Positions 29,082-61,250 of a stretch of 64,000 nt of DNA are shown piece after piece. The position numbers were made by a program, and so were the translations under genes. The stretch is from Octopus bimaculoides. Lineage: Eukaryota. The first letter of the stretch is position 1, and every line of letters begins with the position of its first letter. Location: the NCBI RefSeq assembly GCF_001194135.2, contig NC_068984.1, forward strand, positions 115,506,304 to 115,570,303, in the 5' to 3' direction. Under the pieces are notes generated by a model that ran no database searches, had not been told where the DNA came from, and saw only the letters and a program-made list of their open reading frames with translations.

Positions 29082-29457
29082 TTAATTAAAAGCAATTTGG
29101 TTACAAGAATCTACCGAAGGTTGAAACAGGGAGTCCAGAAGTGGATATTCAGTATTCATTTGTAATTCCCAACTCATTTCAGGTGGTAAATATGTTTTAT
29201 TTCCATGTAGAATTACATCACTGCTGCTGTTGATGGGAAATTCTGATGCCATTGCTGTAGCATTGAATGAAGATACAGCTTCATCTATTATCAGTCTATC
29301 TTCAAAGACATCACTATCATCATTCTCATTCTTCTTCTTATTATTATTATTATCATTACCATTGTAATCTTTCTCATGAGACAGCTTCTCTTCTTTAGAT
29401 TTGGTTCTTTTGTTGTTGTTTTTCAGTTTGCTTTTACATTTATGGCATTTTGAGTTT
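29082..29457 (-). CDS. HMG gene terminal coding exon (basic/Asn-rich then acidic-hydrophobic C-terminus, TAA stop)
   Basis: Acceptor TTTCCATTTTCATTAG, phase 2, open for 124 codons to TAA at 29082. Confidence 0.8.
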
Positions 29458-32400
29458 CTAATGAAAATGGAAAGAAAGATGGTTCTGATCAAAAGAAATG
29501 ATACTAGTTCAAAGTGATTAGTCTAAAACAAAGAAATATAGTTCTGTAAAAAATGGTTTTAGCCTCAAAAAAATACATTTCTAGTATAAAGATATTTTCT
29601 TGTAGAAGGATACATGGTTATAAAACAAAGTGCTAGAAGAACAAAATGGTTCTAGCACAAAGAATTATGATTCTAAAACAAAAGCTATGGTTAATTCTAG
29701 GACAGGCATGGATAACCTTTTTCAAGAAGCAGGTTGCATGATGTGTGACTTATCATCAAGTAGACTGCACCACTAAAAACATTTTAGGTAATCTTTTTTT
29801 TAGACATGCCATTCATAAATTCCTGCAAGCTGTATGTAGCCTGCAAGTTGCCCGTAAGTGTTATCAAGGAAATATATGATCCTAGCACATATAATTATAG
29901 TTCTAAAACAGAAAAAATATGTGCAATGTTAGTACCAGTTCGAATATACCAGTGGCACGTTCGGACTCGTAAACAAGCCATTCACTGTATTTTGTCATGG
30001 AGAAAATTTCTCACTGTAGACAAATAGAGTAAATACACCAAAATCAGCTTGCAGCGCCACCTATCCAGACTGTGAGATGCAAGCATTTTGGAGTGGTTAT
30101 CTCCTCTTCAGTCACAGAAACTGAATGGTAGTGATGCAAGCTGATAAGAGAGACAATCTCTCCTATGTTATTCCAGTCATCATATGTAAGCTGGTAACAC
30201 AAATAGGCAGCCCACATCATTAAAAAAATATGGTTGTAGAGTAAAGAAATATAGTTTCTATTATTAAGAAATATGGTTACAGTAATAAAAAAAAATTGTT
30301 TATGTTCAAAGAAATATTGTTCTTGTCCAAAGAAATAAACTATTTGCAAGCGAACTTATTTCTGTCTTGCATATTTTTCTCCAAATATCTTTGAGGCCTT
30401 TAATTCCAATGCAACCTCAAGTTGGCTCTGACCAAACAGGCCTACATTAACTTAAGGAAAAAAGTATGGTCAAGGTTAAAATGACTTTAATTTTAGGTCT
30501 GTTCAATTAAAGTTGACCTGGGTTTGAACATTTTGAAACAGCAGTTTGATTTTCCTCAAATTGTACCCCATCATCTTCATTGAACAAATTTAGTTCTAGA
30601 TATACAAAATAAGACAGTCCAGCTTTGGATAAAAAGACCTATAACCAAAGATATTAACAAGTGGAAACATCTTTTTTTTTTATATAGTAGGCCTGTTTGG
30701 TCAGAGCCAACTCAGGGTTAAAAAGCAACATCTTAATATATCCAGGATATCAAATTTTTTTACATTGTTATTGGTCTGACTGGCTGAAAGCTGGAATGTA
30801 AGCCATCACTCAAGTTCAATGTAGAAACGGAATATTAACTTACTTTACATTCTCTTTGCATCTTGGAATACGTTTCTTCGACATTATTTTCTTCTTAGTG
30901 GGAATGTCATCAAATATGTCCAAAACCTAAGATATAAACATACAAGCATCCGTATTAATCAGTCACTGGTAAAGAGAGATTGCTTTGCTTGTTTCTTCGT
31001 TTGTGTGTGTGTGTGCGCACATGCATCCGCATGCACTCACATGTGCAAGCATGCCTCTCTGTTTCTGAAGATATTCACCCACTGAAATATTACTATACCG
31101 ACGTTATTCTTGTATCAAAATGATTTTATTTTATATGTCAACGATTTACTAAGGGTAGTCTTCGGCAGATTGATACTAAATGGGTCAAGGGGTTACTGCA
31201 AGGGTGAGTACATTAGCTAAGCAATTACATTATGATTAGACGGTGAATTATCTCATGAAGGTCAGTTTTGCCTTTGGTCCTTATGGGGTTGATAAAATGA
31301 AGTACCAGTCAAGTAATAGGGTCAATGTCATCAGCTAGTCCCCACCCAACAAATTTCAGACCTCGTGTTTATAGCAGAAAGAATTTCAGTGGAGCACTAA
31401 CAGCACTGTCCGAGTGTGTTCATTGCCAGAGCAGCTGTCTGGCTTCCATGCCAGTGGCATGTAAATAGCACCATTTGAGCGTAATCATTACCAGCGTCGC
31501 CTTCTAGCACTTGTGCTGGTGACACGTTAGAAAATCATTCGAGCGAGGTCGTTGCCAGTGCTGCTGGACTGGCTCCTGTGCAGGTGGCACGTAAAAAACA
31601 CCATTTTGAGCGTGGCTGTTGCCACTGGCCCTCGTGCCGGTGGCATATAAAAGCACCCACTACACTCTCGGAGTGGTTGGTGTTAGGAAGGGCATCCAGC
31701 TGTAGAAACTCTGCCAGATCAGATTGGAGCCTGGTGCAGCCTTCTGGCTTACCAGTCCTCAGTCAAATCGTCCAACCCATGCTAGTATGGAAAGCGAACG
31801 TTAAACAATGATGATGATGATATATATATATATATACACTCACACAAATGGAAATCAAAAATTATCCGCACTTTCACCATAACATATCTCTGTTATAGTC
31901 ACACTGCCTTCTGTGCATACATGCCTATAGTTGGTACTATTGTGGTCATGTGATCAAAGTTGGTTTATGAGTGGATCGAGAAGTTTAAAAGTGGTTGGAC
32001 AAGCGAGACACACAAAGAGGGAGCAAGACGTCCATCGACCTCCGCCACTAACAAGACTTTTCAGCAAGCTTGAGAAATGGTAATGGTGAACCGGAAAGTT
32101 ATCGTTGATGAGGTAGCTCATTCTCTGCAGATTTACGATGATTCTGCCTATCAAATCATCCATGAGGAGATTGGCTTCCATAAAGTCTGTGCAAAATGGG
32201 TGCCAAGAGGGCTTACTGCAGAGCACAAGTGCAAATATCTTGAGGTTTACCAATGTTTACTCAGTCGTTACAATGAGGGCGAAGAATTTTTTAGCAGAAT
32301 AGTCACAGGAGATGAAACATGGGTCCATCATTATGAGGCAGAATCCAAAAGACAGAGCATGGAGTGGAAACAGCCTGGCTCAGCAGTGATGAAGAAATTC

Positions 32401-32963
32401 AATACTCAGTCTTCCACAGGAAAGGTGATGCTAACTGTTTTTTTGGTGGGGACTAAAAAGAGCCTATACGGGAAGACTACTTGGAAAAGGGGTGTACGAT
32501 TAACAGTGCAAGATACAGTGCTTTGCTGGCAAATACACTGATGCCAGAAATTTGCACCAAACATCGAAACCTATTGTTGAAGAAAGTTTTGCTGCTGCAT
32601 GACAATGCACACCCACACATGGCCACACAGACTATTGAAACCATTAACCAATTGGGTTTTGGGGTGCTGGAAAACCCTCCCTACAGCCCAGATCTTACCC
32701 CTTCTGACCATCATATCTTTGGACCACTCAAAGATGGTTTATGAGGTCATCAATTTCCTACAGATGAAGATGTGAAGGAAGCAGTGGTTGCACAACCAAT
32801 CAAAAACTTTCTAGGAAGGAATATGCAAGCTTGTGGACTGCTGGACCAAGTGCATGGGGAGGGAAGGAGACTAAATAGAAAAATGGCGTACTTCTTTATC
32901 CCCTGCTTTTGTGTAAACACATTGAAAAATCAAGAGTGTGTATAATTTTTGACTCTCCCTCAA

Positions 32964-32995
<32 letters not shown>

Positions 32996-35873
32996 ATTAT
33001 ATATATAATTATATATATACACATATATATAATTAAATATATATATACATATACACACGCACATAGACATTCAGATTTAGTCAAACCATTCAGTGATGGA
33101 GTAGTCACTACTAATGAGCTTGTAATCTTTCAGGCAAAACTATATTAGTCTAGTGATCTTAGTATCACTTATGGGGCAGTTATCTCCCCGCTCAGTATAT
33201 AAATATGTGCTTTCTTGCAGCAGAGGGTTTTAACTCTTATTTCTAGCAATATAGGTGCTACCTAGCACCCTCAGTCAAAATTAGTGGCAATTGAATTTTC
33301 ACTTTATGGTTTTTATATTGCATATAGCTACCTTCATTATTTCATACACACACACGGATTTCTGTGCATATGTGTGCTAATACACTTGGATTGTGTCAAG
33401 TTTGTCATATATTACGTTGATTATCATCAATGTGATACTTTAACTATTAATGTGCAACTTCAAATCCTCAACTTTACCTTGTTATCCTTTTGGGGTTGAT
33501 AAATTAAAGTACCACTCAAGTTCTAGGGTTGATGTAATTGACAAAACCACTCCCACTGAAATTGCTGGCCTTGTGTCAAAATTTGAAACAATTATAAGGT
33601 GAATTTTTAGACTCTTTCGAGTGTCAAAAACTATATCATAGTGTATGCATCCCAGATCTTTAAATCCCACAGAGGCCAGTTTTGCCTTCCATCCTTTCAG
33701 TGTCAATAAACAAAGCGTCAGTCAAGTAGTGAGATTAATTTCTACCACACCCTCTCTCTCTCTCTGTGAATCAGCCTTATGAAGGAAATAGAAAGAATCA
33801 CATCTGCTCAATCATTTCTCATAATTCTGTGGATACAACAAAAAAAGTTCACATTATGCATCTAAATATTTATATTTCTGTTCAGTGTCTTACTGCAATA
33901 TCTGTCTGCTCTCCAATAGTGCTAGTAACATAACAGTTTTTCTATGAAAGGAAGCTACTATTCTCCATCCACCCAACCTCCACATAACTTTTCTTTATTC
34001 CTGGATTAAGGGAGCTGCTTGTGCAACAGAACCAATTCCTAGAAAGAGGGGAAAGCAAACAGATACAGATAAGAACTGATCTCAGCACTTGACTGGCATT
34101 TTATTTATCAACCCTAGAAAAAATAAAAAGGTAAACTTGACTCTAATAGGATTTGAACTCAGAGCTGACAGATCCAGAACAAATACTGCAAGGAATTTTA
34201 CCTAATGCTCTAATAACTCTGCCAATTTGTCATGTTATATCTAAATATACAAGAAATACATAATTACTTTTTTCTTCCGTTTCTCTGCTGGTCTCAAGCG
34301 TGTTGGCATCACTTCTAAAACAACATCCACATCATTTTTCTTATTCGAATACATCCAATCTGGATGCTTCTTGCGTAAATCTTTCATCTCTGCTTCAAAT
34401 TTCCGCCTATGCAAAATACAGAATATTTTGTTTGTTTTCATGTTTAATTCTTTCAGACAATAACCACATTCATGATGATGCTGACGATAAAGATATAATC
34501 ATGCTGTTGATGGCAATTATGATATGATAATGATAATGACACTGATATAATGATGATGATGATGATGATAGCACAAGTTAACTTGCCCCGGTTTATCTTT
34601 GGATCATGTCAATAGGATCCTGGAGAAGGTCTTTGAGGTGTTATGCAAGCCTTATTGGACCTGAAATTTTGCATGGGCAACAGTCAGTAATGGTACTCCT
34701 CAGTCACAAGCATCATATATGTATACATATATATGAGAGGGTGCAGAAAAGTTCCTGGCTCTGGGTAAAAGAAAATACAGGAGGATCAGCAAATTATGAT
34801 TTTATTCAACATATTCCCCTCTCAGATGCACACACTTATTGTAGTGGGCCTTCAGTTTTTCTAAGCCCTGTAAAAGAACACGGAACACTGCACATCCAAC
34901 CAGGCCTTTTGCTATACCCTTAAAGCCAGGAACTTGTTGGTACCCCTTCATATGTGTGTGTGTAATACATATTTGTATACACATATACATTTAAATATAT
35001 ATAAATATATGATAATATTAAACAAGAATGAGTGCTCAATACCGCATTAATGGATAAAAATTTTATTCATGGGTCTTTTAATCCAAGATGGAGATGAACA
35101 CCTATGTTCCATGAGGTAGGCTAGATGATTAAGAGACCACTCTTAACATGAAACCAATGGTAGCCTTTACACACATCTATGCACATATGAAGGGGGTGCT
35201 GAAAAGTTCCTGGCTTTAAGGGTATCATGAAAGGCTTGGCTGGAGGACCAAACTTCCAAGTTCTTTTACAGGGCTTAGAAACACTGAAGGACTGCTGCAA
35301 TAAGCGTGTGAATCTGAGAGGGAAAAAGTTGAATAAAATCCTAATTAACTGATCTTCTTGTATATATAATTGTAAGAATATAATTATAATTAAGGGCACT
35401 GAAATCTCAGCACTTATACACTAGAAGTAGATGTCAAATACCTGCAATCCACTCAAAATTTATTCTCTATCTATAACCCAAGGCTGAATGTGCAGAAATG
35501 AGCAGGAAGATTTACAAATTTCGGATAATCCTATATCTCAAGATTTCATGCTCTGAAATGAAGATTACTTTGTACTCATCAGTAGAGATAAACTGACAAT
35601 ATATAAGCAAAAGGCACTGACATTCCAGTGTCCTTAATTATAATTATATTTTTATAATTATATACTTAAAAATTCATTTTACCAATATGGTTGTTTTTTA
35701 TATGCTAGCCACCAACACATAATAATCATGGTAATGATTATATCCTTAATGTATAAGTATATATATATATATATACATACATATACACATACATACATAC
35801 ATACATACATACATACATACATACATCCATGCATGCATGCATGCATGCATGCATGCATGCATACATACATACA

Positions 35874-35909
<36 letters not shown>

Positions 35910-37346
35910 TATATATATTCGCCTCTCCAGTTCGTGCTTCACAGCGTTCAATATACACACACTTCTCAACGTCTGGCTGTACAGCCTTTTTGTTTGTTTA
36001 TTTCACCGTTTCATTTTCCTGTCTTGTTTTCTGTCCGCCACTATCCTCCACGAAAAAATTTTATTTGTGTTTGTGGGAAGAGCCATTTTAACGATGCATC
36101 CTGCCCTAACTCTTCGAAACGCCAGTGTTTTAATGGTGGCAGCTGATGAAGGATATGTTCTCTATGTGGCCTGCTTGTTTTTTGTACCTTGTTTATCATT
36201 TTGTCCATGTATTTTTGCAACGTCATGTACCCAGATATGTATCTATAAGATAAAAGATATATNNNNNNNNNNNNNNNNNNNNNNNNNNNNNNNNNNNNNN
36301 NNNNNNNNNNNNNNNNNNNNNNNNNNNNNNNNNNNNNNNNNNNNNNNNNNNNNNNNNNNNNNNNNNNNNNNNNNNNNNNNNNNNNNNNNNNNNNNNNNNN
36401 NNNNNNNNNNNNNNNNNNNNNNNNNNNNNNNNNNNNNNNNNNNNNNNNNNNNNNNNNNNNNNNNNNNNNNNNNNNNNNNNNNNNNNNNNNNNNNNNNNNN
36501 NNNNNNNNNNNNNNNNNNNNNNNNNNNNNNNNNNNNNNNNNNNNNNNNNNNNNNNNNNNNNNNNNNNNNNNNNNNNNNNNNNNNNNNNNNNNNNNNNNNN
36601 NNNNNNNNNNNNNNNNNNNNNNNNNNNNNNNNNNNNNNNNNNNNNNNNNNNNNNNNNNNNNNNNNNNNNNNNNNNNNNNNNNNNNNNNNNNNNNNNNNNN
36701 NNNNNNNNNNNNNNNNNNNNNNNNNNNNNNNNNNNNNNNNNNNNNNNNNNNNNNNNNNNNNNNNNNNNNNNNNNNNNNNNNNNNNNNNNNNNNNNNNNNN
36801 NNNNNNNNNNNNNNNNNNNNNNNNNNNNNNNNNNNNNNNNNNNNNNNNNNNNNNNNNNNNNNNNNNNNNNNNNNNNNNNNNNNNNNNNNNNNNNNNNNNN
36901 NNNNNNNNNNNNNNNNNNNNNNNNNNNNNNNNNNNNNNNNNNNNNNNNNNNNNNNNNNNNNNNNNNNNNNNNNNNNNNNNNNNNNNNNNNNNNNNNNNNN
37001 NNNNNNNNNNNNNNNNNNNNNNNNNNNNNNNNNNNNNNNNNNNNNNNNNNNNNNNNNNNNNNNNNNNNNNNNNNNNNNNNNNNNNNNNNNNNNNNNNNNN
37101 NNNNNNNNNNNNNNNNNNNNNNNNNNNNNNNNNNNNNNNNNNNNNNNNNNNNNNNNNNNNNNNNNNNNNNNNNNNNNNNNNNNNNNNNNNNNNNNNNNNN
37201 NNNNNNNNNNNGTTTTAAATAATCACCTAAGCGACATTAAATATCCGAATAATTTACTGGCTTTTTTAACCTATATCACTAACAATGTTATGAACTATCG
37301 CTCTAAACAAATAGGTAAATAAATAAAATAATCATACAGTTTATCA

Positions 37347-37380
<34 letters not shown>

Positions 37381-40300: not shown

Positions 40301-43300
40301 AACTTCATTATTAGCAACAGAAGCAATATTAGTTCAGAAAAGCTATCTGTATATCTTACTCAATAGGGATATACTGTTGAAAGCTACAAGACTGAATGAG
40401 TAAAGAAAGAAGCAGCTTTATGCAAGCAGATGAAAAGCTATATTACAAAAGAAGGGACCTGAACAGAACAGGGATTTTTGCTGTAGAAGAACAACATAGC
40501 TACTCCCATTATAGAAGAGTGGGTGGGAATAACTCAGGTGGAACTGGAAACACAGATAAAATAGAGATGACAAAGGTGTCAGGATGGACTCCAAAGGTAC
40601 AAGGAGGTGAAAAGAAGTATGTAGAGAACAGGAATATGAATGGATAGAGATTGCAAGAGTTTATAAGAAGAGTGAGGAATGGTTAGAGACAGGGCATGAC
40701 TCAGGGAACAAATATAATAAATGAAAAGTAATGGTTGAAGGGTGGTCAATGATGAATAGGTTTTCCATATACAAGAAAATTTATTATAACTCTTTCAAAA
40801 CTGTTTCTGTGTATTTTAATCAATTTTGAAGAGGATTAAAAACTTTGGAAGAATTTATAGAAATATCCAGCTGTAAAAAACAGGCTTTGCCAGTGTTGGT
40901 GCCACATGAAAAGCACCCAAACTGCCTGTGAAATGGGTGACTTTAGAAAGAGCATCCAGTTGTAAAAAATAATGCCTAAACAGACCTCATCAGTGCTAGT
41001 GCCACATGAGAAGCATTCAGTCCACTCTGGAAGAGCATCCGGCTGTAAAAACTATATCAAAACAGGCAGTGGAGCTTGGTACAGTCCTCTGGCTTGCTAG
41101 TTCCTGTCAAAATGTCCATCCCATGCAAGCATGGAAAGTAGACTTTAAGTGATGATGATGATAAACTTTTGTTATTAAACTGGAATGTGGCACAAACAAA
41201 ATACAGTGGAAGGCAGTGTATTTCATAAATGCAAAGCTTTTAGCATAAGCAGAGGATACAAGAATACCCAGCACATATTCAGGACTCATCTTAATAACAA
41301 CAGATATATGGAAATATTATCTGCTAAAATTATGATGGATGGTTAAACTTTAAAAAGGAATGCTCAAAAACAGAAGATTTCTTACCACAGAACTAGAGGT
41401 GGTTACAGGCAGGTTGGCATGTAAAGAGTTTAAATAATGAAATTATTTAACTTACTGGTAATGTTCCCTATTTTCTTTAGATAAAAGTTTCCACTGAGAT
41501 CCCAAGACACATGAGATATTCCTGTTATCAAGGTGAGGATTCTTGGCAGCAACTTCAGCTCTCTTCTCCACAGAATATCTAATGAAACCATTTTGGGGTC
41601 GCTTAATATTGCTTGAACCTAAAACAGTAAAACATAACACACAAAAGAGAATAAAAGAATAGCAAAAAAAAAAAAATGTGCAAAATATTTTATGCCAAAC
41701 AAGAAAAAAATTCATGAAATAATGCACATGTGAGTGTACACGTGTGCATGCATGCACACCTGCAATTTTCTCTAAGGAAGAATATATTTGAGAGAATACG
41801 ATATATTATTTTACTTCCAGAGCAAAGATGAGACTTAAAATATTCATTAGTGTATTATGTAAGTACAATTCTGTATTTCCAATGCTCACATGGTTAATGA
41901 GAGATATATCAGAAACATACTGGGATTAATTATTAATTATAATTAACTCAATGTGGAAAGTTGGCAGAATCGTTAGCATGCTGGACAAAATGCTTAGTTG
42001 CATTTCATTTGTCTTACATTCTCAACTCAAATTCCACTGAGGTCAACTTAGCCTTTCATCCTTTTAGAATCAATGAAATAAGTACCAGTTGCGTACTGGA
42101 GTTGATGTAATTGACTAGCCCCTTCTCCCAAATTTTAGGCCTTGTGCCTATAGTAGAAAGTATTATAATTAACTCAATAAACTGCACTCCTTCCTTAGAC
42201 AAAAATTAACCTGTTTGTGATTTGTCAGAAAGAGAAATGAATATTTTCACTTAATGAATTAACTAGCAAGATTTCCAGTACAAAATGATATTAAATGTGG
42301 TACACACCTATTTGAGATTGAAAATTACAACCGACTGACTGAACTCAAACCACAAGTAATACCCAACAGCCTTTTACATTGAAAATTTTACAAGTTATTG
42401 CTTTCATAATTTAATTCAGTGTGTGAGATGCTTCTGGAACCTTGCTAGTAGATAGATAGAATTGAATAAATAACTAGAGAAAGTAATAATTCCGCTCAAT
42501 ATCTTGGTTGTAATTTTAAGGAGACAAGCTGGCAGATTGTTAGCACACCATGTGAAATGCTTAATGGCAGTTCGCCTGTCTTCACATTCTGCATGCAAAT
42601 TCTGCTGAGGTTGACTTTGCCTTTCATCCTTTTGGGGGCCAATAAAATAAGGACCAGCTGAATACTGCGGTTGATATAATCAACTTACTTCCCCACACGC
42701 TGAAATTGCTGGCCTTGTACCAAAATTTTAAATCAATATCTTGGCTGCAGTTGGTTCTAAGAGAATAATTCCTAAATAGTGAGAACAAGACTTGGTACCT
42801 GGAAAAATTCTCGTACTGCAAAAATTAACACAAAATATGAGATGAGACAAAAGTCAAGCTTCCCCTAAAGAAAAGGCAAAAAAAAAATCATTTTATACAT
42901 TCACTTTAATAAGTCCTCTGATAAAAATCCCTTGATTGCATGTGGACTAGTTCAATGACAGTAAACATGGGCTAGGTCATGCTGACAATGGGGGAAAGGC
43001 AACATGCCTATTTTCTGCTAGTTCACAAACTCTTCAATTAGAATGCTTGGTTCCAAACGCTTGCTTTTTTGTTTCAAGTTCCACCGTCGTAAGATTTTTT
43101 GTGCAGATATAAAATAATCCTAGATAGCTTTTGGCAAACTAATGTATTAAGTGACTATATGTCTTGGAGGATCATTATTTTGAGTATAAGAACCATTCTA
43201 GTACCAAGAATAAATCATGAATAAGTCTCTTTATATGGAGGTGAGATACCTGTGTTGAGAATAAGAACAGATCTTTAATTTGACAAATTCAAACCTAAAC

Positions 43301-46156
43301 TAATATTTGGGTCTTAAGGCTTTTTTCATGTTATTACATTATTTCATATAATTTAGGTTTTTATCGCCTCTTTACAGCATTTATCGAAATATCACTTGTT
43401 CTAACAATTTTATCACTTACCTAAATTTACTGAATATCCTCTCCATGAAGATCCACCTGACTAACGCATCTCTCTTCTGTATTATCCAACAATAATTGTC
43501 CAGTATTTCGTCTGCTATTATGTTCTGAGTTCAAATTCCACTGAGGTCAACTTTGCTTTTCATCCTTTTGCGGGGCGATTAAATAAGTACCAGTCACGCA
43601 CTAGGGTCGATGTAATCGACTTAATCCTTTTGTCTGTCCTTGTTTGTCTCCTCCCCTCTATGTTTAGCCCCCTGTGGGCAATAAAGTATTAAATAATTGT
43701 CTTACTTCCCAGATTATGTATAAAATTTCATCCCCATTCACATCTCCCTCAAACTCCAATGGTATGAAATGGCTTCTATTAAGAACCCGAGGACCATCAC
43801 TACATTCCTCTTAAGCCATAAAGCTAACTAAAACAATAAGTTTTCCTGAGCCTGATTGATTACAAACAATAACAACTTACAGTTCTTTTGACAAGAAGAA
43901 TGTGTTTGGTCTTTACATGAAGTTTTATCGTTATTCTTCTGTACCATCATATTAAGTTCCAGTGCATAGTTTGCAGTAGCAATTACAACATCTTCCTGTA
44001 AGAAATAAATAATAATCCGTGTTAGTAATTAACATATTCTTGAATGAAAATATAATTTTTAAAATTTTGTTTCATTGTATTTATTTATATACATATATTT
44101 TCACTACAATCCCTAGAAAACCCAAGTTTTGTGAGTGGATTTAGTAGAAAGAAACTGAAAGACGTTCTCTCTCTCTTTCTTTCTCTCTCTCTCTCTTTAT
44201 ATATATATATAAACTAGGCCATGTATCGTATGTGTAAATGTATATGTATGTATATATGTCTGTATGTGTATGCATGTGTATGTATGTATATGTGTGTGTA
44301 TGTGTATGCATATGTATGTGTATGTATGTGTATGTGTGTGTATGGATGCGTGTATGGAGGGATGAAGGACAGACAGAGACATACACGGATACACACACCC
44401 AACAAGCTTCTTTCAGTTTCTGTTTAACGAATTCACTCACAAGGATTTAGTCTGCCCAAGGCCACAGTAGTAGACACTTGCCAAAAGTTCCAGGCAGTGG
44501 GACTGAACCTGGAACCATGTGGTTGCAAAGCAAGTATTTCCTAATAGTTTTCTTAATTTCTGTACTGTCATTGTCATTTTAATGACAACTTTTTCCATGC
44601 CTGTGTGGATGAGACAGAATTTGTCGAAGTGGATTTTCTAATCAGACGATCTTCTTATGGCTAACCTTAACTTGTTTCCAAACAAGAAAATATTTCCCCA
44701 TGAACAGACATGTTTTCATAGAAGATTGAAAATGAATGGGCATCACTTGTATAATGATGACATTTGTTTCATAAATAGTATATGATGCAAAGCGCTCATG
44801 CATACGCGCACACACAGACACACACATAAAGGGCTCTTTTTAGCTTCCATCTACCAAATCCACTCTAAATGCTTTGGTGAATCTGAGTTTCGATAAGACA
44901 TTTGTCCAAGGTGTTATGCAGTGAGACTGAACCCAAAACCACATGATTAGGAAGTAAACTTCTTAATCACACAACCATGGCTGCATTCATCATCATCATC
45001 ATCAAACATTTATTTTCCATACTGGCTTTGGTTGGATGACTTGACAGGAGCTGGCAAAGTAAAGGACTGCACCAAACTCCATTGTCTGTGGCATGGTTTT
45101 TATAGCAGGATGCCCTTCCTAACACCAACCACTTTACAGATTGGACTGGGTACTTTCCATGTGGCACTAGCACTGACAAGGTCTGCTTAGGCATAGTTTT
45201 TACAGCTGGATGAATTTTCTAATGCCAACCACTTTTCAGATAGGAACTGGGTACTTTCCATGTGGCACCAGCATTGATGAGGTCTTGTTAGGTATAGATT
45301 TTACAGTTTGATGGATTTCCTAATACCAACCACTTTACAGAATGGACTGAGTGCTTTTCAGGTGGCACCAACACTGGCAAAGCTTGCACATTGACTGTTT
45401 TCATTCCCAGAAGAAAACAAGAGTAGGAAGTAAAGTTAGAACATANNNNNNNNNNNNNNNNNNNNNNNNNNNNNNNNNNNNNNNNNNNNNNNNNNNNNNN
45501 NNNNNNNNNNNNNNNNNNNNNNNNNNNNNNNNNNNNNNNNNNNNNNNNNNNNNNNNNNNNNNNNNNNNNNNNNNNNNNNNNNNNNNNNNNNNNNNNNNNN
45601 NNNNNNNNNNNNNNNNNNNNNNNNNNNNNNNNNNNNNNNNNNNNNNNNNNNNNNNNNNNNNNNNNNNNNNNNNNNNNNNNNNNNNNNNNNNNNNNNNNNN
45701 NNNNNNTATATATATATATATATATATATATTATATTATATATATATATATGTATGTATACATATATATATATTATACATTTAAGTTATGTAAGTGTGGT
45801 TATGCTGGAGTGCAACCATGTGCACGCATATGCCCTTGCATGCCCACAAACACACACGTATTTAATGTAATTCATTGAAACTGAATCCTCATCACACAAG
45901 GCAAATCTTATGCTTCAGCAATTTTCAAGCAAGTGAATGTTTATCTTGCAACTTGAGTTTCATGCCACTGTGATCATTAGGTGAGAACTCACCTGAAGAT
46001 AGCAAAACCATATACTCTAACTCTACAACATCTATTGAGCATTTCTTTCTCATCTAGTCAACATCATTTGATTTTTGCACATGCGTGCGCATATGTATGT
46101 GTGTGTGAAAGTATGTATGTATATTTGTGTATATATGTATAAATATATGCAAGTGC

Positions 46157-46200
<44 letters not shown>

Positions 46201-49110
46201 NNNNNNNNNNNNNNNNNNNNNNNNNNNNNNNNNNNNNNNNNNNNNNNNNNNNNNNNNNNNNNNNNNNNNNNNNNNNNNNNNNNNNNNNNNNNNNNNNNNN
46301 NNNNNNNNNNNNNNNNNNNNNNNNNNNNNNNNNNNNNNNNNNNNNNNNNNNNNNNNNNNNNNNNNNNNNNNNNNNNNNNNNNNNNNNNNNNNNNNNNNNN
46401 NNNNNNNNNNNNNNNNNNNNNNNNNNNNNNNNNNNNNNNNNNNNNNNNNNNNNNNNNNNNNNNNNNNNNNNNNNNNNNNNNNNNNNNNNNNNNNNNNNNN
46501 NNNNNNNNNNNNNNNNNNNNNNNNNNNNNNNNNNNNNNNNNNNNNNNNNNNNNNNNNNNNNNNNNNNNNNNNNNNNNNNNNNNNNNNNNNNNNNNNNNNN
46601 NNNNNNNNNNNNNNNNNNNNNNNNNNNNNNNNNNNNNNNNNNNNNNNNNNNNNNNNNNNNNNNNNNNNNNNNNNNNNNNNNNNNNNNNNNNNNNNNNNNN
46701 NNNNNNNNNNNNNNNNNNNNNNNNNNNNNNNNNNNNNNNNNNNNNNNNNNNNNNNNNNNNNNNNNNNNNNNNNNNNNNNNNNNNNNNNNNNNNNNNNNNN
46801 NNNNNNNNNNNNNNNNNNNNNNNNNNNNNNNNNNNNNNNNNNNNNNNNNNNNNNNNNNNNNNNNNNNNNNNNNNNNNNNNNNNNNNNNNNNNNNNNNNNN
46901 NNNNNNNNNNNNNNNNNNNNNNNNNNNNNNNNNNNNNNNNNNNNNNNNNNAAAGTACCTGGACATACTGTGATGGAAGAAAATAATGAAAAAGACCTTAA
47001 TGCCGGATTATCTCCAAAGACTTATGCAGGAGGAGGAGGAGGAGGAGGAGGAGGAGGAGGAGGATTGGCCCGGATGCAATACCAGGCAGTGGCTCTCACA
47101 GTTTCTGATCTTAACAGATTGGAAGTGTTAATGGTAAATTTTGATCCTTTCACCCACATGATTTTTCACTAAGGGAAAAAAACTCGGATTTTGTGCATAG
47201 AATCAAGTACCCTGACTTCCTAATATGCTGCAAACCCTTTATTTTTGGCTGGAATCATTGGAATTTTTTTTTTTTTCGTTGAATGAATTCCGGTGACCTA
47301 ATATGCCACAAAATCTTTTTGGTTTGGAAAACGGGGTGGGGTGGGGTGAAGTGGAAGCCTTTGAAATTTCTGCAGGTACATTTGCTGTGTTTTTTGCCTT
47401 GTGGCCCTTTTTTTCTCCTCCCCACTTTTTGTGTGGATACGGTTTGGTCATTGTTTTTGTTGTTTTGTTTTTCTTTTTGCCCTTTTTTCCTTCTTTTGGA
47501 TGATGTTTTCCACTGTTTATCCTGGTCAGACTTGCTGCATGTCATATCTGACCATATGAAATCAGGAAGTGACATGTCCTATCTTAAAGTTGAGAGGTAA
47601 CTGGAAGAATCCATTGTTGCTATGGTGAGAATTGGTGTTGAAGTGGCTGTTGTTGTCGGCAGTTTTTCTGTTGTTTTTGTTGATGTTGCTTTGTGGCCAT
47701 TGCTGGTGGGTTCCTTGATGCTGGGAGAAGGATGAGGGAGTCTCTTCCCTTTCTCCTTCAATGCTAGGCAGAAGGTTCTTAAGTGTGAAGTCAGAAGGAA
47801 GATGTGACACCTGGCCTTCCTCCCCGGATAGAATGATGCTACCTGAGAAATCTAACTGATCTGGGATGGCATCTACATTTTTAACTGTTTTGGATGAGGA
47901 GTTCTATCTCCATCCGCAACCAGTTCTCTTTTTTGGTCTGGTAGACTTTGAAGATTTTTGTGTTTCCTTCAATGTCTCTACCATGACAGCAGTTGTTAAC
48001 CTAGGAACTGCTATCTCTGATGGCATCCGTGGGACTTGCATTCTTGCTAGTCTCTGGCCACAGTAGTAAGAGACTAACAAGAGATCCTCACTTTTCAAGT
48101 GTTTTTGAAAGTGAAATTTTGCCTCTTCCTTTATTTCAAATCTCACTTTCACTGTTCCATAACCCTTCCTCTTTGGATTTTTCTTCTAGGCTCCAAATGG
48201 AACCTAATGCTTTTTTTGGACTTGAGCCTCAGTGGTTCTTTCCACTCTTTTCAACTTTAATTATGGTATTTAATTATGGTATTTTGAATGGTGTGTCAAT
48301 CAGGATGTTGAGTTTGACAGTTTGTTCATCTTACCCTCCCAGCCATCTTTCCTTCTTGATCTCTTCCTCAGAGTAGTTCACTCTTTGGAAAGAGGACTTA
48401 GTGGCACTAGTGAAAAAGAGACTGGTGTTTGTCATTGCCTTTGTACTGGTTTGTTGGTCTGTGCTCGTCATTGCTACTTTCGTTGCTGTTGTTGTTGCTC
48501 ATATCTTTCTCAGAGGTTAGTCTTTGCTGTGTTGATACTGACTGACATTTGTAATCTGAACCATGAATAACTTCAATTTGTTAAAATTTTTATCATAATT
48601 ATTGTTATTGGCTTCAACATTTTTTATTGTTTGTTTCACTTCAAATTGGGTGTTGTTGTTGTTGTTACTAGTTGTTGTTGATGGTAGTGGTTTGAAAGAT
48701 TACTTTGTTGAAATATTGTTTCGTGAATATTTATAACATCACTGTTGTTGAAAACTGCCTTGTTATCTGTTTTTTTTTCCAATGCGGCGACATAGCACAT
48801 CATGTTCGCTACATTCTGATGACACTCCTCACACTTTTCTTCTCTCCCAGACACCAGCCTCACCACATCAATTTTTTTTTTTCCTCCGTGGATAGAGAAA
48901 ATGAAAATTTCCGTAACAGAAACAAAATTAAATTGAGATATCCCCAAGACTGGGGGACAACACAGAAAAAGAAACTCACCAGTTGGTAGACCACAACTCT
49001 TTTTCCATGATGGTATAAATTCCAAAACTGGATGCAAAATTTATCTGTGGTTTTGTTGACAAAAATTACAGAGGCAAGGTAAAGCCTGGCTTACCAGGCT
49101 GATGCAATAA

Positions 49111-49172
<62 letters not shown>

Positions 49173-49233
49173 ATAACAACAACAACAATAATAGTAATTG
49201 CTGCTGCTGCTACTGCTGCTGCTGCTACTGCTG

Positions 49234-49284
<51 letters not shown>

Positions 49285-49310
49285 GCTGAACCNNNNNNNN
49301 NNTGCAATAA

Positions 49311-49360
<50 letters not shown>

Positions 49361-55300: not shown

Positions 55301-56969
55301 TTTTGTAGGGTGCAAAATCAAAATCTGCACCCCTACTTACTTTTCTCAAGTTAAGAAAACTGAATAAAAAGGGATCTATAAAAAGTAGTTCAAAGTTAGG
55401 TTTCTTCACAATGAACAAAATAGAATAAAACTAGACTGTTACATGGTGAGTCAGTAATGTAAATTGGAAGGAATGTCTCCTATATGTAATGTGTTCAAGT
55501 TGTAACATGTGTAGTTAGCATTTTTAGAAGGCAATTCATAGAAAGAATCCATTTTCAGTAATTTCTTATAGGCATGAATAAAGAATATTCAGAAGGCAAG
55601 TTTATAAAATAAAAACAATGAAATTTATTCAGTAGTGTAATGAGTGCTAGCAAGTGGTAACAAGGATTAATCTTGCATATGAATGAGAACCAAATATATG
55701 TGTATGCAAGACAGGAAAACCGCATAACTTACTATATACACTGAGGTTTTTATATGAAACAGAGTGGAAGCTGATATTAATCAAATGAGTTGACCTCTCT
55801 TTAAGTGATTTCTTAAAGAAGCATGAATAAAGAATATTCAGAAGGCAAGTTTATAAAACAAAAACATTGAAATTTATTCAGTGATGTGACATGTTGAAGA
55901 AAGCAATGTTGCTTCTACGCCATCAGATCCACAACTAGTTTGAAACTGCTACTTCGCTGTACACACACGCATGCACAAGAAGTAAATGGAATGGATTTAG
56001 TTTAATCGAAAATGAGAAGAACAATGCAAAAATACCAAGAACAATGAAGAACAGTAACATTAAAAAAAAAACCAATTATCACATTCTAAATAGAAAATAT
56101 TGACATACTTTCTGTCAAAGCTTTTACATTTTCTTTTTGAGGTTTTCTCGAGCTTTCTTTTGTGACTTGATGGCAGAGAGAAAGAGTCCCTTGTTGCTGG
56201 AATGATTTATGAGAATTTGGCAAATCAACAGAGTTAGTTTGCTGATAAGGACTTTCTGTGGTGTCAAGAAGGCCAGCTCCACTTTGAGAGTGCAGATTCT
56301 GACTTGGTGAATGAAACTTCTTCATCAACACATCATTAAATAATGGCTGAATGTTCTTTACATCATGTTTTTCAGATTCTTCTTTTATTTCAAAAGGATG
56401 AGGAGAAACTAAAGTCTTCTTTGATGAATTCTGATTACCTTTAATAAAATCTGAAGAAATTTTAGAAGATCCTGTGTAAAGAAAGCTTTGGTTTGTATTT
56501 GAAGACTTTCTCTTCAAGTTTGTAAATTCTGCACCCGATATCAATTGATGTTTGGAAAATGTCTTTGAGACGTCTACTTCAATAACATCACCGGGAAAAT
56601 ATTCCCTTTTCACATGTTTGATTACTGTCAGAGGACTGTCATCTGTTTGGTGAGAAGATAAGCATTCTTTGGTGTTATACTTTTCAAAATTTTCAATTGA
56701 ATTTGTCACAAAAGTGTGTTTGTAAAAGTTTTCATTTGTAGGTTGCATGGGAAAAGACATGCGACTACTTTTTGTTATTTCACCTGGAGCCTTTACATGG
56801 GAATTTTCAAAGGATAATTGAGGAGACTGAATTTCTAGCAAATGAATGTTGTCCATATTCAAGATATGACTACAGTTGGAACTTTTTTCAGTTTTGCATT
56901 CATTCTGTAAATGACAAACAGTACCTGAGCAATCACTGTTATGCAATGAACTGCTACTATTATTATTTC

Positions 56970-57006
<37 letters not shown>

Positions 57007-57061
57007 GTTATTATTATTGTTATTAATATTAATATTATTATTGTTATTATNNNNNNNNNNA

Positions 57062-57104
<43 letters not shown>

Positions 57105-57495
57105 CATTAAAAATAGAATCATTCTTTACATCAATATTTTTTATGTCTCCAAACGGAAATTTAATTGTTGGTGACTGAGTCCTCCTAGTCGCATGTTGAG
57201 ATTCCCACGATTGCTTGGGAGATGTAAGATTTTCAGGAAAAAGCCAAACTGGGTCTACTACACTGTCTTTGGAACAATCCAAATGATAACTGCATGGAAA
57301 AAGTTTTTTCTCAGATTTAAGATTCTCTTTCGGCAATCCATGAAAGTCTTGAAGAAAATAATTTCTAGGTTTTACGTCTTCATTAAGAGTATTATCAAAA
57401 TTCAAGTTGGGTGACACAAATTCTTTGATTCTGAAGGTATCTGATGACCATTTAGGCATAAATGTAATGCTACTATCTATAGATTCTTCATTCAT
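29082..57495 (-). CDS. Multi-exon gene encoding a divergent Sox/HBP1-like HMG-box protein (715 aa in 5-exon model; 775 aa with two cassette exons)
   Basis: Exons 57495-56109, 41618-41456, 34406-34268, 30926-30844 and 29457-29082 all have GT-AG boundaries and phases 1,2,0,2 that join without stops (2148 nt). Exons 2+3 rebuild an HMG box. The length assumes the 10-N gap at 57051-57060 preserves frame. Confidence 0.85.
30420..30712. mobile_element. MITE with perfect 26-bp inverted repeat
   Basis: AGTTGGCTCTGACCAAACAGGCCTAC (30420-30445) is the exact reverse complement of 30687-30712. Confidence 0.75.
30844..30926 (-). CDS. HMG gene short exon (VLDIFDDIPTKKKIMSKKRIPRCKENV; not in ORF track)
   Basis: Acceptor TTTATATCTTAG, donor AA|GTAAGT. 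Phase 0 to 2 is exactly the bridge needed between the flanking exons. Confidence 0.78.
31385..31820 (+). mobile_element. SINE/short element with RTE-type 3' tail ending (GAT)n
   Basis: GAGTGGTTGG.GTTAGGAAGGGCATCCAGCTGTAGAAA...CAACCCATGCTAGCATGGAAAGCG.ACGTTAAAC.ATGATGATG. Near-identical 3' part at 17-178. Diverged copies at 4100-4225, 26850-27000, 40870-41160, 44990-45400 and 59700-59850. Confidence 0.8.
31845..32962 (+). mobile_element. Degenerate mariner (Tc1/mariner, DD34D) transposon, near full length
   Basis: Frameshifted transposase with KWVPR, GDETWVHHY, LLLHDNAHPH and PYSPDLTPSD motifs. Imperfect TIRs TCAAAAATTAT(C/A)C(G/A)CACT at 31855-31872 and 32935-32952, flanked by (TA)n. Confidence 0.93.
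34268..34406 (-). CDS. HMG gene exon encoding end of HMG box and basic tail
   Basis: Acceptor TATTTTGCATAG (phase 2; CA+G=Gln), donor AAA|GTAATT. Encodes RKFEAEMKDLRKKHPDWMYSNKKNDVDVVLEVMPTRLRPAEKRKKK. Confidence 0.9.
34734..34950 (+). mobile_element. Mariner-type MITE, second copy
   Basis: Colinear with 2780-2995, with the same TIRs and TA flanks. Confidence 0.8.
35188..35362 (-). mobile_element. Mariner-type MITE, third (inverted, truncated) copy
   Basis: Reverse-complement match to the right three quarters of 34734-34950. Confidence 0.75.
36263..37211. other. Assembly gap (largest of 12)
   Basis: N runs at 8945-9551, 16382-16401, 18130-18235, 22505-22554, 26123-26186, 36263-37211, 45446-45706, 46201-46950, 49293-49302, 57051-57060, 58518-58906 and 63676-63685. 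These may hide exons. Confidence 1.
41456..41618 (-). CDS. HMG gene exon encoding N-terminal three quarters of the HMG box
   Basis: Acceptor TTTTACTGTTTTAG, donor CA|GTAAGT. Encodes SSNIKRPQNGFIRYSVEKRAEVAAKNPHLDNRNISCVLGSQWKLLSKENREHY. Confidence 0.92.
43881..43995 (-). CDS. Candidate cassette exon C of HMG gene (phase 0 to 1; EDVVIATANYALELNMMVQKNNDKTSCKDQTHSSCQKN)
   Basis: Strong acceptor TTATTTATTTCTTACAG and donor AACT|GTAAGT. Only phase 0 is open (38 codons). It ends in phase 1, matching the HMG exon start. Confidence 0.55.
47300..48560 (-). mobile_element. Decayed gag-like ORF1 of a non-LTR retrotransposon (L1/Tx1-like)
   Basis: Multiply frameshifted protein-like text (GYGTVKVRF..EEAK...LKSEDLLLVSYYCGQRLARM.V..MP.EI) followed by a degenerate zinc knuckle (GRKARCHIFLLTSHLRTFC, 47765-47827). 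Confidence 0.55.
48980..49044 (-). CDS. Candidate cassette exon B of HMG gene (phase 1 to 0; NKFCIQFWNLYHHGKRVVVYQL)
   Basis: Acceptor AAACCACAG, strong donor CTG|GTGAGT, open in the phase required after exon 1. Confidence 0.4.
49108..49446. repeat. Compound trinucleotide microsatellite (TAG)n-(CAA)n-(CTG)n-(CTA)n, present twice around a 10-N gap
   Basis: Directly visible in the sequence. Confidence 0.9.
49443..49469 (-). mobile_element. Helitron 3' terminus
   Basis: Minus strand: perfect hairpin CCGTGAA-TTT-TTCACGG, 6 nt spacer, then CTAG followed by T. Confidence 0.7.
49924..51480 (+). mobile_element. Degenerate Tigger/pogo DNA transposon (3' truncated)
   Basis: Starts TA-CAGGCATACCTC (Tigger-type TIR). 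Broken ORF with psq/CENP-B HTH (ITLEDKLAMMK, KASQGWFMRFK) and DDE region (QIFNIDETGL, KLKPLLVYH, KAWVT..VFEDWF, LLILGNVPGH, LQPMD). Confidence 0.9.
51797..52886 (+). mobile_element. 5'-truncated Dong/R4-clade (RLE-type) non-LTR retrotransposon, 3' end
   Basis: GLKSETEEFIIAAQDQ.LPTRNYQ, CCHC finger (CRVC..ETIDHVVSMC), KNWWENKPPPVLE, TIQTDRKIDAN, KLSKYKNL..EISKMW, IPVVIG. Both ends abut (TAA)n tracts. Confidence 0.88.
54424..54811 (-). mobile_element. tRNA-derived SINE family A, most intact copy
   Basis: Head GCAGGAGTGGCTGTGTGGTAAG...GGTTCCAGGTTCAGTCC, internal (CA/TA)n, tail ACTGAAACAAGTAAAAGAGTAAAAGAG. Diverged copies at about 1985-2280, 4990-5230, 11700-12065, 16105-16545, 23410-23730, 38525-38935, 44105-44535, 44830-44980, 49680-49900, 53762-54010, 55070-55230, 59085-59580 and 62560-62690. 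Confidence 0.85.
56109..57495 (-). CDS. HMG gene coding exon 1 (462 codons +1 nt; low-complexity, poly-Asn, Ser-rich)
   Basis: 469-codon open frame in AT-rich DNA. Acceptor TTTTATCATTGCAG lies 31 nt before the ATG, with an in-frame TGA in between, so 57495 is the likely start. Donor GAAA|GTATGT at 56109/56108. Confidence 0.8.
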
Positions 57496-61090: not shown

Positions 61091-61247
61091 CACAGGAGTG
61101 GCTGTGTGGTAAGTAGCTTGCTTACCAACCACATGGTTCTGGGTTCGGTCCCATTGCGTGGCACCTTGGGCAAGTGTCTTCTCTAGCCTCGGGCTGACCA
61201 AAGCCTTATGAGTGGATTTGGTAGATGGAAACTGAAAGAAGCCCGTC

Positions 61248-61250
<3 letters not shown>
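61091..61250 (+). mobile_element. SINE family A, 5' half
   Basis: Head and body match family A. Truncated at the (TA)n tract. Confidence 0.8.

What the first reader, a model, noticed from the sequence alone, without database searches (positions are those of the whole stretch)
29082..57495. Unassembled 28-kb gene for a large, highly divergent Sox-like HMG-box factor
The ORF track shows only disconnected pieces. Five exons, including an 83-nt exon absent from the track, join with exact phase agreement into 715 aa. The layout is ~460 aa disordered N-terminus, HMG box, two basic NLS-like clusters (RPAEKRKKK; PTKKKIMSKKR) and an acidic/hydrophobic tail. A long N-terminal exon before an intron-split, divergent box recalls SOX30/SoxH, which is testis-biased in vertebrates and reported as male-biased in bivalves. 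It could be a cephalopod SoxH-like germline/sex-related regulator or a lineage-specific HMG family. This is my best candidate for novel biology here.
Basis: partly seen in the sequence, partly recalled or inferred. Interest (0 to 1): 0.72.

Follow-up and report, generated by a model that had tools for sequence, protein, structure and literature searches.

The report
Octopus HLH–HMG gene split by gaps
This is a real, already partly annotated octopus gene for an HMG-box DNA-binding factor; it is not a Sox gene but a member of an old, unstudied animal family that joins a helix-loop-helix to the HMG box (the pairing known from the vertebrate meiosis starter MEIOSIN), and two of its exons are lost in assembly gaps.

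Summary
The window is Octopus bimaculoides (CM046604.1, about 115.5 Mb). They have GT-AG borders, matching phases and give 715 aa, and four of them match NCBI model XP_014776519.1. The model is incomplete, though. In O. vulgaris three more exons (47, 96 and 115 nt) lie between exon 1 and the HMG box. The 115-nt exon is readable at 43995-43881. The other two map into the gaps 46201-46950 and 45446-45706. Skipping all three keeps the frame only because they total 258 nt. The first 641 bp of exon 1, including the ATG and the poly-Asn tract, are absent from O. vulgaris.

The SoxH reading fails. The box is 32-34% identical to SOX30 and SRY, lacks RPMNAFMVW, and octopus has a separate Sox30. The gene belongs to a family found from a jellyfish to amphioxus with the layout (b)HLH + HMG box + EPMPxRLRPR motif + CW zinc finger. 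In octopus the CW finger has decayed and the HLH is weak.

bHLH + HMG is the MEIOSIN layout. I could not obtain a vertebrate MEIOSIN sequence, so orthology is untested. The gene appears to be autosomal, but this rests only on accession order. No expression data were available.

The parts
56109..57495 (-). First coding exon (1387 nt, ends in phase 1 at donor GTATGT). Only 56109-56882 is shared with O. vulgaris. The alternative conserved start is Met at 56856 (MDNIHLL). It contains the (AAT)n poly-Asn tract with assembly gap 57051-57060.
   Evidence: O. vulgaris uses the same donor (L001 10748). There are no indels in 771 nt against 7% gap columns in introns, and dN/dS is 0.74.
56883..57523 (-). 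641-bp segment present in the window but absent from O. vulgaris. It holds the ATG at 57495, about 204 codons and the poly-Asn tract. It is flanked by a 3-nt GTT microhomology.
57524..57537 (-). Conserved acceptor-like tract ttttatcattgcag|G just upstream of exon 1. It suggests a 5'UTR intron. An in-frame TGA lies 4 codons before the ATG.
   Evidence: sequence reading; no RNA evidence.
46201..46950 (-). Assembly gap predicted to hide a 47-nt exon (phase 1 to 0; O. vulgaris peptide IKLEEILDNCWNVPID) at about 46617-46663.
   Evidence: Colinear blocks window 45707-46174 = L001 22025-21560. The O. vulgaris exon is at L001 21071-21117. tblastn finds nothing in readable sequence. Inferred, not seen.
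45446..45706 (-). Assembly gap predicted to hide a 96-nt exon (phase 0 to 0; ENQELGNLELQNLITKLREYLPKNDLLHKPTL = HLH helix 1 plus loop) at about 45485-45580.
   Evidence: Colinear block window 44898-45445 = L001 23214-22680. The O. vulgaris exon is at L001 22545-22640. Inferred, not seen.
43881..43995 (-). It encodes HLH helix 2 and a linker.
   Evidence: tblastn 82% to P0001 aa 298-336. Borders are cag|GAAGAT ... AACT|gtaagt. It is part of XP_014776519.1 and A0A0L8H0F9.
41456..41618 (-). HMG box exon 1 (163 nt, phase 1 to 2): SSNIKRPQNGFIRYSVEKRAEVAAKNPHLDNRNISCVLGSQWKLLSKENREHY(Q).
   Evidence: It is 98.8% identical in nucleotides to O. vulgaris, with dN/dS 0.25.
34268..34406 (-). HMG box exon 2 plus the post-box motif (139 nt, phase 2 to 0): RKFEAEMKDLRKKHPDWMYSNKK...LEVMPTRLRPAEKRKKK.
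   Evidence: dN/dS is 0.22.
30844..30926 (-). 83-nt exon (phase 0 to 2): basic linker VLDIFDDIPTKKKIMSKKRIPRCKENVK. It is 95 nt in O. vulgaris (+RTSK).
   Evidence: It is in XP_014776519.1.
29082..29457 (-). Terminal coding exon with stop codon: a decayed CW-type zinc finger. KCHKC is kept, the Trp residues and the 3rd Cys are lost, and there is an N/K-rich insertion of about 65 aa. The tail is conserved.
   Evidence: It is conserved in O. vulgaris at L001 52171-52552 with the same stop; indels are 12 and 3 nt only. There is no Pfam zf-CW hit. pLDDT is 40-50.

Best explanation
The locus is the O. bimaculoides member of an old, so far unnamed animal family of transcription factors. The family layout is helix-loop-helix, then a sequence-specific-type HMG box, then a conserved 'E-P-M-P-x-R-L-R-P-R-x-K-L-K-R-K' extension and basic linker, then a CW-type zinc finger.

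Shown: the true gene has at least eight coding exons over about 28 kb. Two of them, which encode HLH helix 1 and the loop, are hidden in assembly gaps. That is why public models cover only the 3' half (276 or 292 aa).

Inferred mechanism: the HMG box binds the minor groove and bends DNA. It keeps Asn10 and the Phe-Ile wedge of RPxNGFI, as in SRY. The HLH has no basic region in octopus and would serve for dimerisation with itself or a partner. In other phyla the CW finger would tether the factor to methylated histone H3 tails, as CW fingers of ZCWPW1 and MORC proteins are known to do (this is from my own knowledge). In octopus the zinc ligands are gone, so that function is probably lost or changed. 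Outside the box the protein is disordered and evolves fast.
For: Gene structure. XP_014776519.1 is reproduced exactly. An eight-exon structure with the same borders gives a 595-aa ORF in O. vulgaris that ends in the same ...DSCNQIAFN.

Family: an exhaustive HMMER search gave single-stretch hits covering the box plus 40-60 residues beyond it, at E 1e-21 to 1e-13. They come from Liolophura, Saccostrea, Pomacea, Haliotis, Owenia, Lottia, Solemya, Argopecten, Lineus, Glandiceps, Ptychodera, Chamberlinius and Branchiostoma. The alignment shows shared RPxNGFIRFS...LDNRxIS...P.W.Y, the post-box motif, and the CW finger. Pfam zf-CW scores E 1e-8 to 1e-17 in relatives.

HLH in the family: it passes Pfam's threshold in amphioxus (22.8 bits against 20.7) and is sub-threshold in five others. 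The family HLH profile's matches with E below about 0.1 among solved structures are all bHLH chains: USF1 5e-8, TAL1 1e-6, USF2, Cbf1, MYC2, Twist1, MITF, ID1, MyoD.

HLH in octopus: hhalign P 3.3e-4. A leave-one-out profile gives 8.4 bits at the expected place. AlphaFold2 predicts helices 270-285 and 297-321 with pLDDT 64-83 just before the box.

Tree and identities: the NJ tree puts octopus inside the family clade. Identity is 38-45% to family members and 25-34% to SRY, SOX30, CIC, HBP1 and BBX.

Constraint: HMG exons have dN/dS 0.22-0.25. Coding exons carry only 3n indels, while introns have 7% gap columns.
Against: Bootstrap support for the family clade is modest (39.5% for bilaterians, 64.5% with the jellyfish; 74 columns).

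The octopus HLH is weak on its own. It has no Pfam HLH hit and no solved-structure hit. One of 2000 shuffles reached the same leave-one-out score. hhalign probability is only 38%.

The CW finger gives no Pfam hit in octopus and is predicted unfolded, so one defining domain is not functional here.

dN/dS outside the box is 0.7 or higher with few substitutions, so constraint there is weak.

No RNA or expression evidence was available. The two hidden exons are inferred from O. vulgaris only. DNA binding, dimerisation and histone reading are all inferred from domain families.
Confidence: 0.78

Rival explanations
1. One reading: a highly divergent Sox gene of the SoxH/SOX30 type.
For: The best solved-structure hits include SRY and SOX2. 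Databases auto-name it 'sex-determining region Y protein-like'. It has a long N-terminal exon before an intron-split box.
Against: It is 34% identical to SRY and 32% to SOX30, below the roughly 50% used to define Sox. RPQNGFIRY stands where Sox has RPMNAFMVW. It carries 'LDNR', as CIC, HBP1 and BBX do and Sox does not. It lies outside the Sox clade, which does hold the SOX30 references. A separate Sox-30-like gene exists in O. sinensis. It shares the HLH, post-box motif and CW relic with a different family.
Confidence: 0.03
2. An ordinary orthologue of HBP1, BBX or capicua, the other 'DNR'-type HMG factors.
For: It shares the DNR motif. CIC (E 1.2e-11) and HBP1 (E 3.8e-9) are among the best hits. 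HBP1 is the top Foldseek hit.
Against: The tree separates it from the PDB-verified CIC, BBX and HBP1 groups. No AXH, CIC or BBX-specific Pfam domain was found in the octopus proteins or their relatives. The relatives instead carry HLH and zf-CW.
Confidence: 0.03
3. A decaying gene or pseudogene in octopods: a family member losing function, with only the HMG box still looking intact.
For: The CW ligands are lost and a low-complexity insertion is present. The HLH is very divergent. dN/dS is 0.74 in exon 1 and above 1 in two small exons. A 641-bp indel removes the start codon in one species. The clusters hold no transcript-derived members from run assemblies.
Against: All eight exons are open, with conserved GT-AG borders, in two species. 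Coding regions have only 3n indels while introns have 7% gap columns. The HMG exons are under purifying selection. The last 75 aa differ at only 3 positions.
Confidence: 0.1
4. The family, and so this gene, is the invertebrate counterpart (pro-orthologue) of vertebrate MEIOSIN/BHMG1, and perhaps of STRA8. It would act at entry into meiosis.
For: MEIOSIN is described as bHLH + HMG, and STRA8 as HLH + HMG-like (PMC10267585; Shimada et al. 2026). I know of no other animal factor with this pairing. The family has the same domain order. Canonical members were found in amphioxus and hemichordates but not in jawed vertebrates among the best 150 hits. That distribution complements MEIOSIN's.
Against: No vertebrate MEIOSIN sequence could be obtained, so HMG and bHLH orthology is untested. 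No vertebrate bHLH-HMG protein was among the best 150 hits. To my knowledge MEIOSIN has no reported CW finger. There is no shared microsynteny in Lottia, Lineus or amphioxus. No expression data were available.
Confidence: 0.35

Closest known systems
MEIOSIN / BHMG1 (vertebrate meiosis initiator) and its partner STRA8
   Same: One polypeptide with an N-terminal (b)HLH followed by an HMG box, and long disordered regions. In some lineages one of the domains has decayed: hagfish and zebrafish Meiosin lack the bHLH, while octopus has a weak HLH and a dead CW finger.
   Different: Sequence relatedness was not tested here. The invertebrate family carries a CW zinc finger and an EPMPxRLRPR motif that I know of no report of in MEIOSIN. 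Function and expression in invertebrates are unknown.
SOX30 / SoxH
   Same: A sequence-specific-type HMG box (Asn10, Phe-Ile/Met wedge) after a long N-terminal region. The fold is the same (TM about 0.8).
   Different: Identity is 32%. There is no RPMNAFMVW motif. It has the DNR motif, an HLH, a post-box motif and a CW relic. The true Sox30 is a separate octopus gene.
Capicua, HBP1 and BBX ('DNR'-type HMG factors)
   Same: The HPxxDNR motif in helix 2 and P-D-W after helix 3. E-values are similar to those for Sox.
   Different: They form separate clades. No AXH, C1 or BBX domains are present. The partner domains differ (HLH and CW).
CW-type zinc-finger histone readers (ZCWPW1/2, MORC3/4, LSD2)
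   Same: Relatives of the octopus gene have a canonical zf-CW (Pfam E down to 1e-17).
   Different: Those proteins have no HMG box or HLH. The octopus copy has lost the Trp cage residues and a Cys ligand and is not predicted to fold.

Membership tests
Sox family | HMG box at least about 50% identical to that of SRY | tested here: not met
   34% over 71 aligned positions to the SRY box of PDB 2gzk.
Sox family | Signature RPMNAFMVW at the start of the box | tested here: not met
   The octopus box reads RPQNGFIRY, matching 4 of 9 positions.
SoxH / SOX30 | The box groups with SOX30 in a phylogeny | tested here: not met
   In the NJ tree, SOX30 (7jjk) and a SOX30-like protein sit in the Sox clade, while octopus sits in the HLH-HMG-CW clade. 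A separate Sox-30-like gene exists in O. sinensis.
HBP1 | AXH domain N-terminal to the box; the box ends in PDCWKRKR | tested here: not met
   No AXH hit in Pfam. The box ends HPDWMYSNKK. It is in a separate clade.
Capicua | CIC-type box (SKILGEWWYAL...HPDWKWC) and a C1 motif | tested here: not met
   34% identity. It is in a separate clade. No CIC-specific Pfam hit.
BBX | BBX-type box and a BBX C-terminal domain | tested here: not met
   25% identity to PDB 1wz6. It is in a separate clade.
HLH-HMG-CW family (unnamed; e.g. amphioxus XP_078580641.1, Lottia V4BDF6, Owenia A0A8J1XZS6) | Box signature [KR]RPxNGFIR[FY]S ... HPxLDNRxIS ... P.W.Y | tested here: met
   The invariant columns R, P, N, F, S, R, P, D, N, R, S, L and W are all kept in octopus.
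HLH-HMG-CW family | Post-box motif (E)PMPxRLRP followed by a basic run | tested here: met
   Octopus has LEVMPTRLRPAEKRKKK. R-L-R is invariant in the family.
HLH-HMG-CW family | Helix-loop-helix N-terminal to the box | tested here: inconclusive
   The family profile's significant matches are all bHLH structures. For the octopus segment: hhalign P 3.3e-4 and probability 38%; 8.4 bits in the leave-one-out test, matched by 1 of 2000 shuffles; AF2 helices at pLDDT 64-83; no hit on its own. In the window only helix 2 is readable.
HLH-HMG-CW family | CW-type zinc finger (4 Cys, conserved Trp) C-terminal to the box | tested here: not met
   The terminal exon aligns to the CW finger but keeps only C-x2-C and one Trp, and it has an insertion of about 65 aa. 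No Pfam zf-CW hit. pLDDT is 40-50. I read this as secondary decay, not as non-membership.
MEIOSIN / BHMG1 | bHLH followed by an HMG box in one protein | tested here: met
   Met at family level and weakly in octopus itself. The MEIOSIN layout is taken from PMC10267585 and Shimada 2026.
MEIOSIN / BHMG1 | The HMG and bHLH domains group with vertebrate MEIOSIN in a phylogeny | not testable with these tools
   No vertebrate MEIOSIN sequence could be retrieved. None was among the best 150 hits.
MEIOSIN / BHMG1 | Germ-cell expression at entry into meiosis; binds meiotic gene promoters | not testable with these tools
   No expression data were reachable. The O. sinensis gonad study does not list this gene.

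The most novel reading that the evidence does not exclude
The bHLH-HMG(-CW) family found here, from a jellyfish through molluscs to amphioxus, is the ancestral form of the vertebrate meiosis initiator MEIOSIN, and possibly of STRA8. That would mean an HMG-based switch into meiosis predates vertebrates, originally coupled to a histone-tail-reading CW finger, and the octopus gene is its cephalopod representative.
Probability: 0.35. Interest if true: 0.85.

Novelty: new variant of a known kind. Interest (0 to 1): 0.55.

Why it matters
For the genome itself, the finding shows that a transcription-factor gene is truncated in the public O. bimaculoides annotation because two small exons fall in assembly gaps. 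It also shows that the O. vulgaris model probably ends in the wrong terminal exon.

For biology, databases auto-label this gene and its relatives 'sex-determining region Y protein', which invites wrong inferences about sex determination. The gene is not a Sox gene and appears not to be on the octopus Z chromosome, although that inference rests only on accession order. It instead belongs to an unstudied, widely conserved HLH + HMG + CW family.

MEIOSIN is the only well-known factor that pairs a bHLH with an HMG box. The 2026 vertebrate study left open what the ancestral meiotic-entry module looked like. This family gives a concrete set of invertebrate genes to test, and that would make an open question directly testable.

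Tried and rejected
1. Three word-indexed homologue searches returned family members but never a vertebrate MEIOSIN. They even missed several sequences that were in the query alignment, so their silence is not evidence.
2. The hagfish hit P0050 could not be tied to the published hagfish Meiosin gene, because no contig is on record. It has two Sox-like boxes and falls in the Sox clade.
3. I looked for microsynteny with the human MEIOSIN neighbourhood (SIX5, FBXO46, DMPK; recalled from memory). Neighbours in Lottia, Lineus and amphioxus are unrelated, so this was uninformative. Two look-ups found nothing.
4. Literature: no paper holds both 'Meiosin' and 'bilateria'. I found none that describes an HMG + CW protein. 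Ishiguro 2020 is not held in the library.
5. The octopus HLH segment alone, against Pfam and against solved structures, gave no hit.
6. Foldseek with the full model returned only generic HMG boxes and did not discriminate between families.
7. The idea that the C-terminal tail is still a folded CW finger was rejected.
8. The O. vulgaris annotated terminal exon (ESEDTLEKQRKFKIGEIN) was considered as the true 3' end and rejected.
9. A possible RB-family first exon at 10152-10520 (-) was recalled from memory. It was not confirmed by Pfam or by a solved-structure search.
Full report
**What is there.**
The window is 36% G+C and carries 12 runs of N. It is identical to Octopus bimaculoides CM046604.1 (147.8 Mb) around 115.53-115.56 Mb. 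All internal borders are AG/GT, the phases are 0/1/2/0/2, and the ORF is 715 codons. Pfam finds one HMG box (E 1.3e-17).

NCBI's model XP_014776519.1 (P0007, 276 aa, 'sex-determining region Y protein-like') uses exactly the junctions HMG1-HMG2-83nt-terminal. UniProt A0A0L8H0F9 (292 aa) does the same.

The O. vulgaris orthologue is P0001 (486 aa; 92% identical over the aligned 46% of the query). It has 86 extra residues between exon 1 and the box. In its locus L001 these residues come from three exons of 47, 96 and 115 nt.

- The 115-nt exon is present in readable window sequence at 43995-43881. It has good splice sites and the right phases, and it is the first exon of the NCBI model.
- The other two have no match anywhere in the readable window.
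- Colinear blastn blocks place them at about 46617-46663 and 45485-45580, inside the gaps 46201-46950 and 45446-45706.
- The three exons total 258 nt.

Gap 57051-57060 lies in an (AAT)n tract. Both flanks read Asn in their own open frames, so continuity is plausible but unproven.

The eight-exon structure gives a 595-aa ORF in O. vulgaris that ends in the same ...DSCNQIAFN as the window. The terminal exon annotated in O. vulgaris has no counterpart in the window.

**The N-terminus.**
Window 56883-57523 (641 bp) is missing from O. vulgaris. It holds the ATG at 57495, about 204 codons and the poly-Asn tract. There, a conserved acceptor-like tract abuts the sequence just upstream of the internal Met (MDNIHLL). 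A 200-codon open extension in AT-rich DNA is unlikely by chance. I could not tell whether it is an O. vulgaris deletion or a window-lineage insertion.

**Constraint.**
The two species differ by 6% in introns, with 7% gap columns.

- HMG exons: dN/dS 0.22-0.25.
- Exon 1: dN/dS 0.74, with no indel in 771 nt.
- Terminal exon: 97.8% identical, with indels of 12 and 3 nt only, and 3 changes in the last 75 residues.

The gene looks functional but evolves fast outside the box.

**What it is.**
An exhaustive HMMER search with P0001 found 2186 proteins. The best single-domain hits extend 40-60 residues past the box. They come from a chiton, bivalves, gastropods, an annelid, a nemertean, a millipede, two hemichordates and amphioxus. 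They are mostly 'uncharacterized' or auto-named SRY.

They share four features:

- the box signature RPxNGFIRFS...LDNRxIS;
- a post-box EPMPxRLRPRxKLKRK motif;
- a basic linker;
- a canonical CW-type zinc finger (Pfam zf-CW E 1e-8 to 1e-17).

N-terminal to the box they carry an HLH. It passes Pfam's threshold in amphioxus and is sub-threshold in five others. A profile of 11 such segments has significant matches only to bHLH chains among solved structures (USF1 5e-8, TAL1 1e-6 and others). A jellyfish protein (Sanderia, P0064) has bHLH + HMG without the CW finger.

**How octopus fits.**
Octopus keeps the box signature and the post-box motif. Its terminal exon aligns to the CW finger but keeps only C-x2-C and one Trp, and it has an insertion of about 65 aa. 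It gives no Pfam hit and is predicted unfolded.

Its HLH is very divergent, and the evidence is mixed:

- hhalign P 3.3e-4, probability 38%;
- 8.4 bits in a leave-one-out test, equalled by 1 of 2000 shuffles;
- AlphaFold2 predicts two helices at pLDDT 64-83 directly before the box;
- the segment alone hits nothing.

The acidic stretch before helix 1 means there is no basic region.

**What it is not.**
With PDB-verified references, the box is 34% identical to SRY, 32% to SOX30, 34% to CIC, 33% to HBP1 and 25% to BBX. It is 38-45% identical to family members. An NJ tree puts it in the family clade, apart from the Sox clade and from the CIC/BBX/HBP1 groups. Support is modest (39.5%, or 64.5% with the jellyfish). 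O. sinensis has a separate, male-biased Sox-30-like gene. Foldseek returns only generic HMG boxes.

**Likely mechanism (inferred).**
The protein would be a sequence-specific, DNA-bending HMG factor; Asn10 and the Phe-Ile wedge are kept. It would dimerise through an HLH. In most phyla it would also read methylated H3 tails through the CW finger, and octopus appears to have lost that module.

**The MEIOSIN lead.**
MEIOSIN is described as bHLH + HMG, and its partner STRA8 as HLH + HMG-like. The family has the same domain order. Among the best hits it appears in invertebrate deuterostomes but not in jawed vertebrates. In the library I could search, no paper links Meiosin with invertebrates.

I could not retrieve a vertebrate MEIOSIN sequence. 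Microsynteny gave nothing. This therefore remains a lead, which I put at about 35%.

**Sex linkage.**
The octopus Z is chromosome 17. This gene lies on a 147.8-Mb chromosome (CM046604.1) and, in O. vulgaris, on OX597817.1 (176.7 Mb). Both are the fourth accession of their series. It is therefore probably autosomal, but this is an inference from size and accession order only.

**Verdict.**
The SoxH interpretation is not supported. The gene is a partly annotated member of an unstudied HLH-HMG-CW family, which may be relevant to how meiotic entry factors evolved.

Noticed in passing
window 56883-57523 (-): A 641-bp indel between O. bimaculoides and O. vulgaris inside the first coding exon. It is flanked by GTT microhomology and carries the start codon, about 204 open codons and a poly-Asn (AAT)n tract. 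Which state is ancestral is unknown.
   Followed up: partly
L001 63401-63460 and L001 52171-52552 (O. vulgaris OX597817.1): The O. vulgaris public model ends in an exon (ESEDTLEKQRKFKIGEIN) that has no counterpart in O. bimaculoides. The conserved terminal exon lies unannotated 11 kb upstream, so the O. vulgaris model is probably mis-terminated.
   Followed up: yes
window 32074-32741 (+), 51104-51541 (+), 51905-52339 (+): Transposon remnants inside the introns: a mariner-like transposase (Transposase_1 / DDE_3, weak), a pogo/Tigger-type DDE_1 (E 3e-10) and a zf-RVT reverse-transcriptase finger (E 3.6e-6).
   Followed up: partly
window 11825-12070, 16100-16552, 22329-22742, 54426-54817, 61093-61282 and many sites in L001: A short interspersed repeat of about 160-400 bp recurs many times in both species' loci at 70-95% identity. 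It dominates the off-diagonal blastn hits.
   Followed up: no
window 49044-49692: A long block of trinucleotide and low-complexity repeats, with reading frames of poly-L, poly-S, poly-Y, poly-V and poly-T, surrounds the 10-N gap 49293-49302 in intron 1.
   Followed up: no
window 35680-36150 and 44140-44450: (TACA/TATG)n-type microsatellites give long spurious ORFs rich in Y, I, H, T, C and M on both strands. They lie next to gaps.
   Followed up: no
window 10152-10520 (-): An ORF with MGLSGDEDVEQRFSNLCRDLNMDRNSQEEAWESYRRIRTYFVLE resembles, from memory, the first exon of a retinoblastoma-family (p107/p130-like) gene. Neither Pfam nor a solved-structure search confirmed it.
   Followed up: partly
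P0064 (Sanderia malayensis, EukProt EP00794_P015736): A jellyfish protein with a basic-region bHLH (Pfam 19.3 bits) and a DNR-type HMG box but no CW finger. It suggests that the bHLH-HMG pairing predates Bilateria.
   Followed up: partly
P0050 (Eptatretus burgeri, UniRef A0A8C4QSR2): A hagfish protein with two Sox-like HMG boxes in a duplicated unit of about 180 aa. Whether it is the published hagfish Meiosin (ENSEBUG00000016420) could not be established.
   Followed up: partly
P0015, P0020, P0022, P0026 (gastropods): Gastropod family members seem to keep only a short 'xxYLLKEIDxLS' remnant where other members have the HLH. This hints at repeated decay of the HLH within the family.
   Followed up: no
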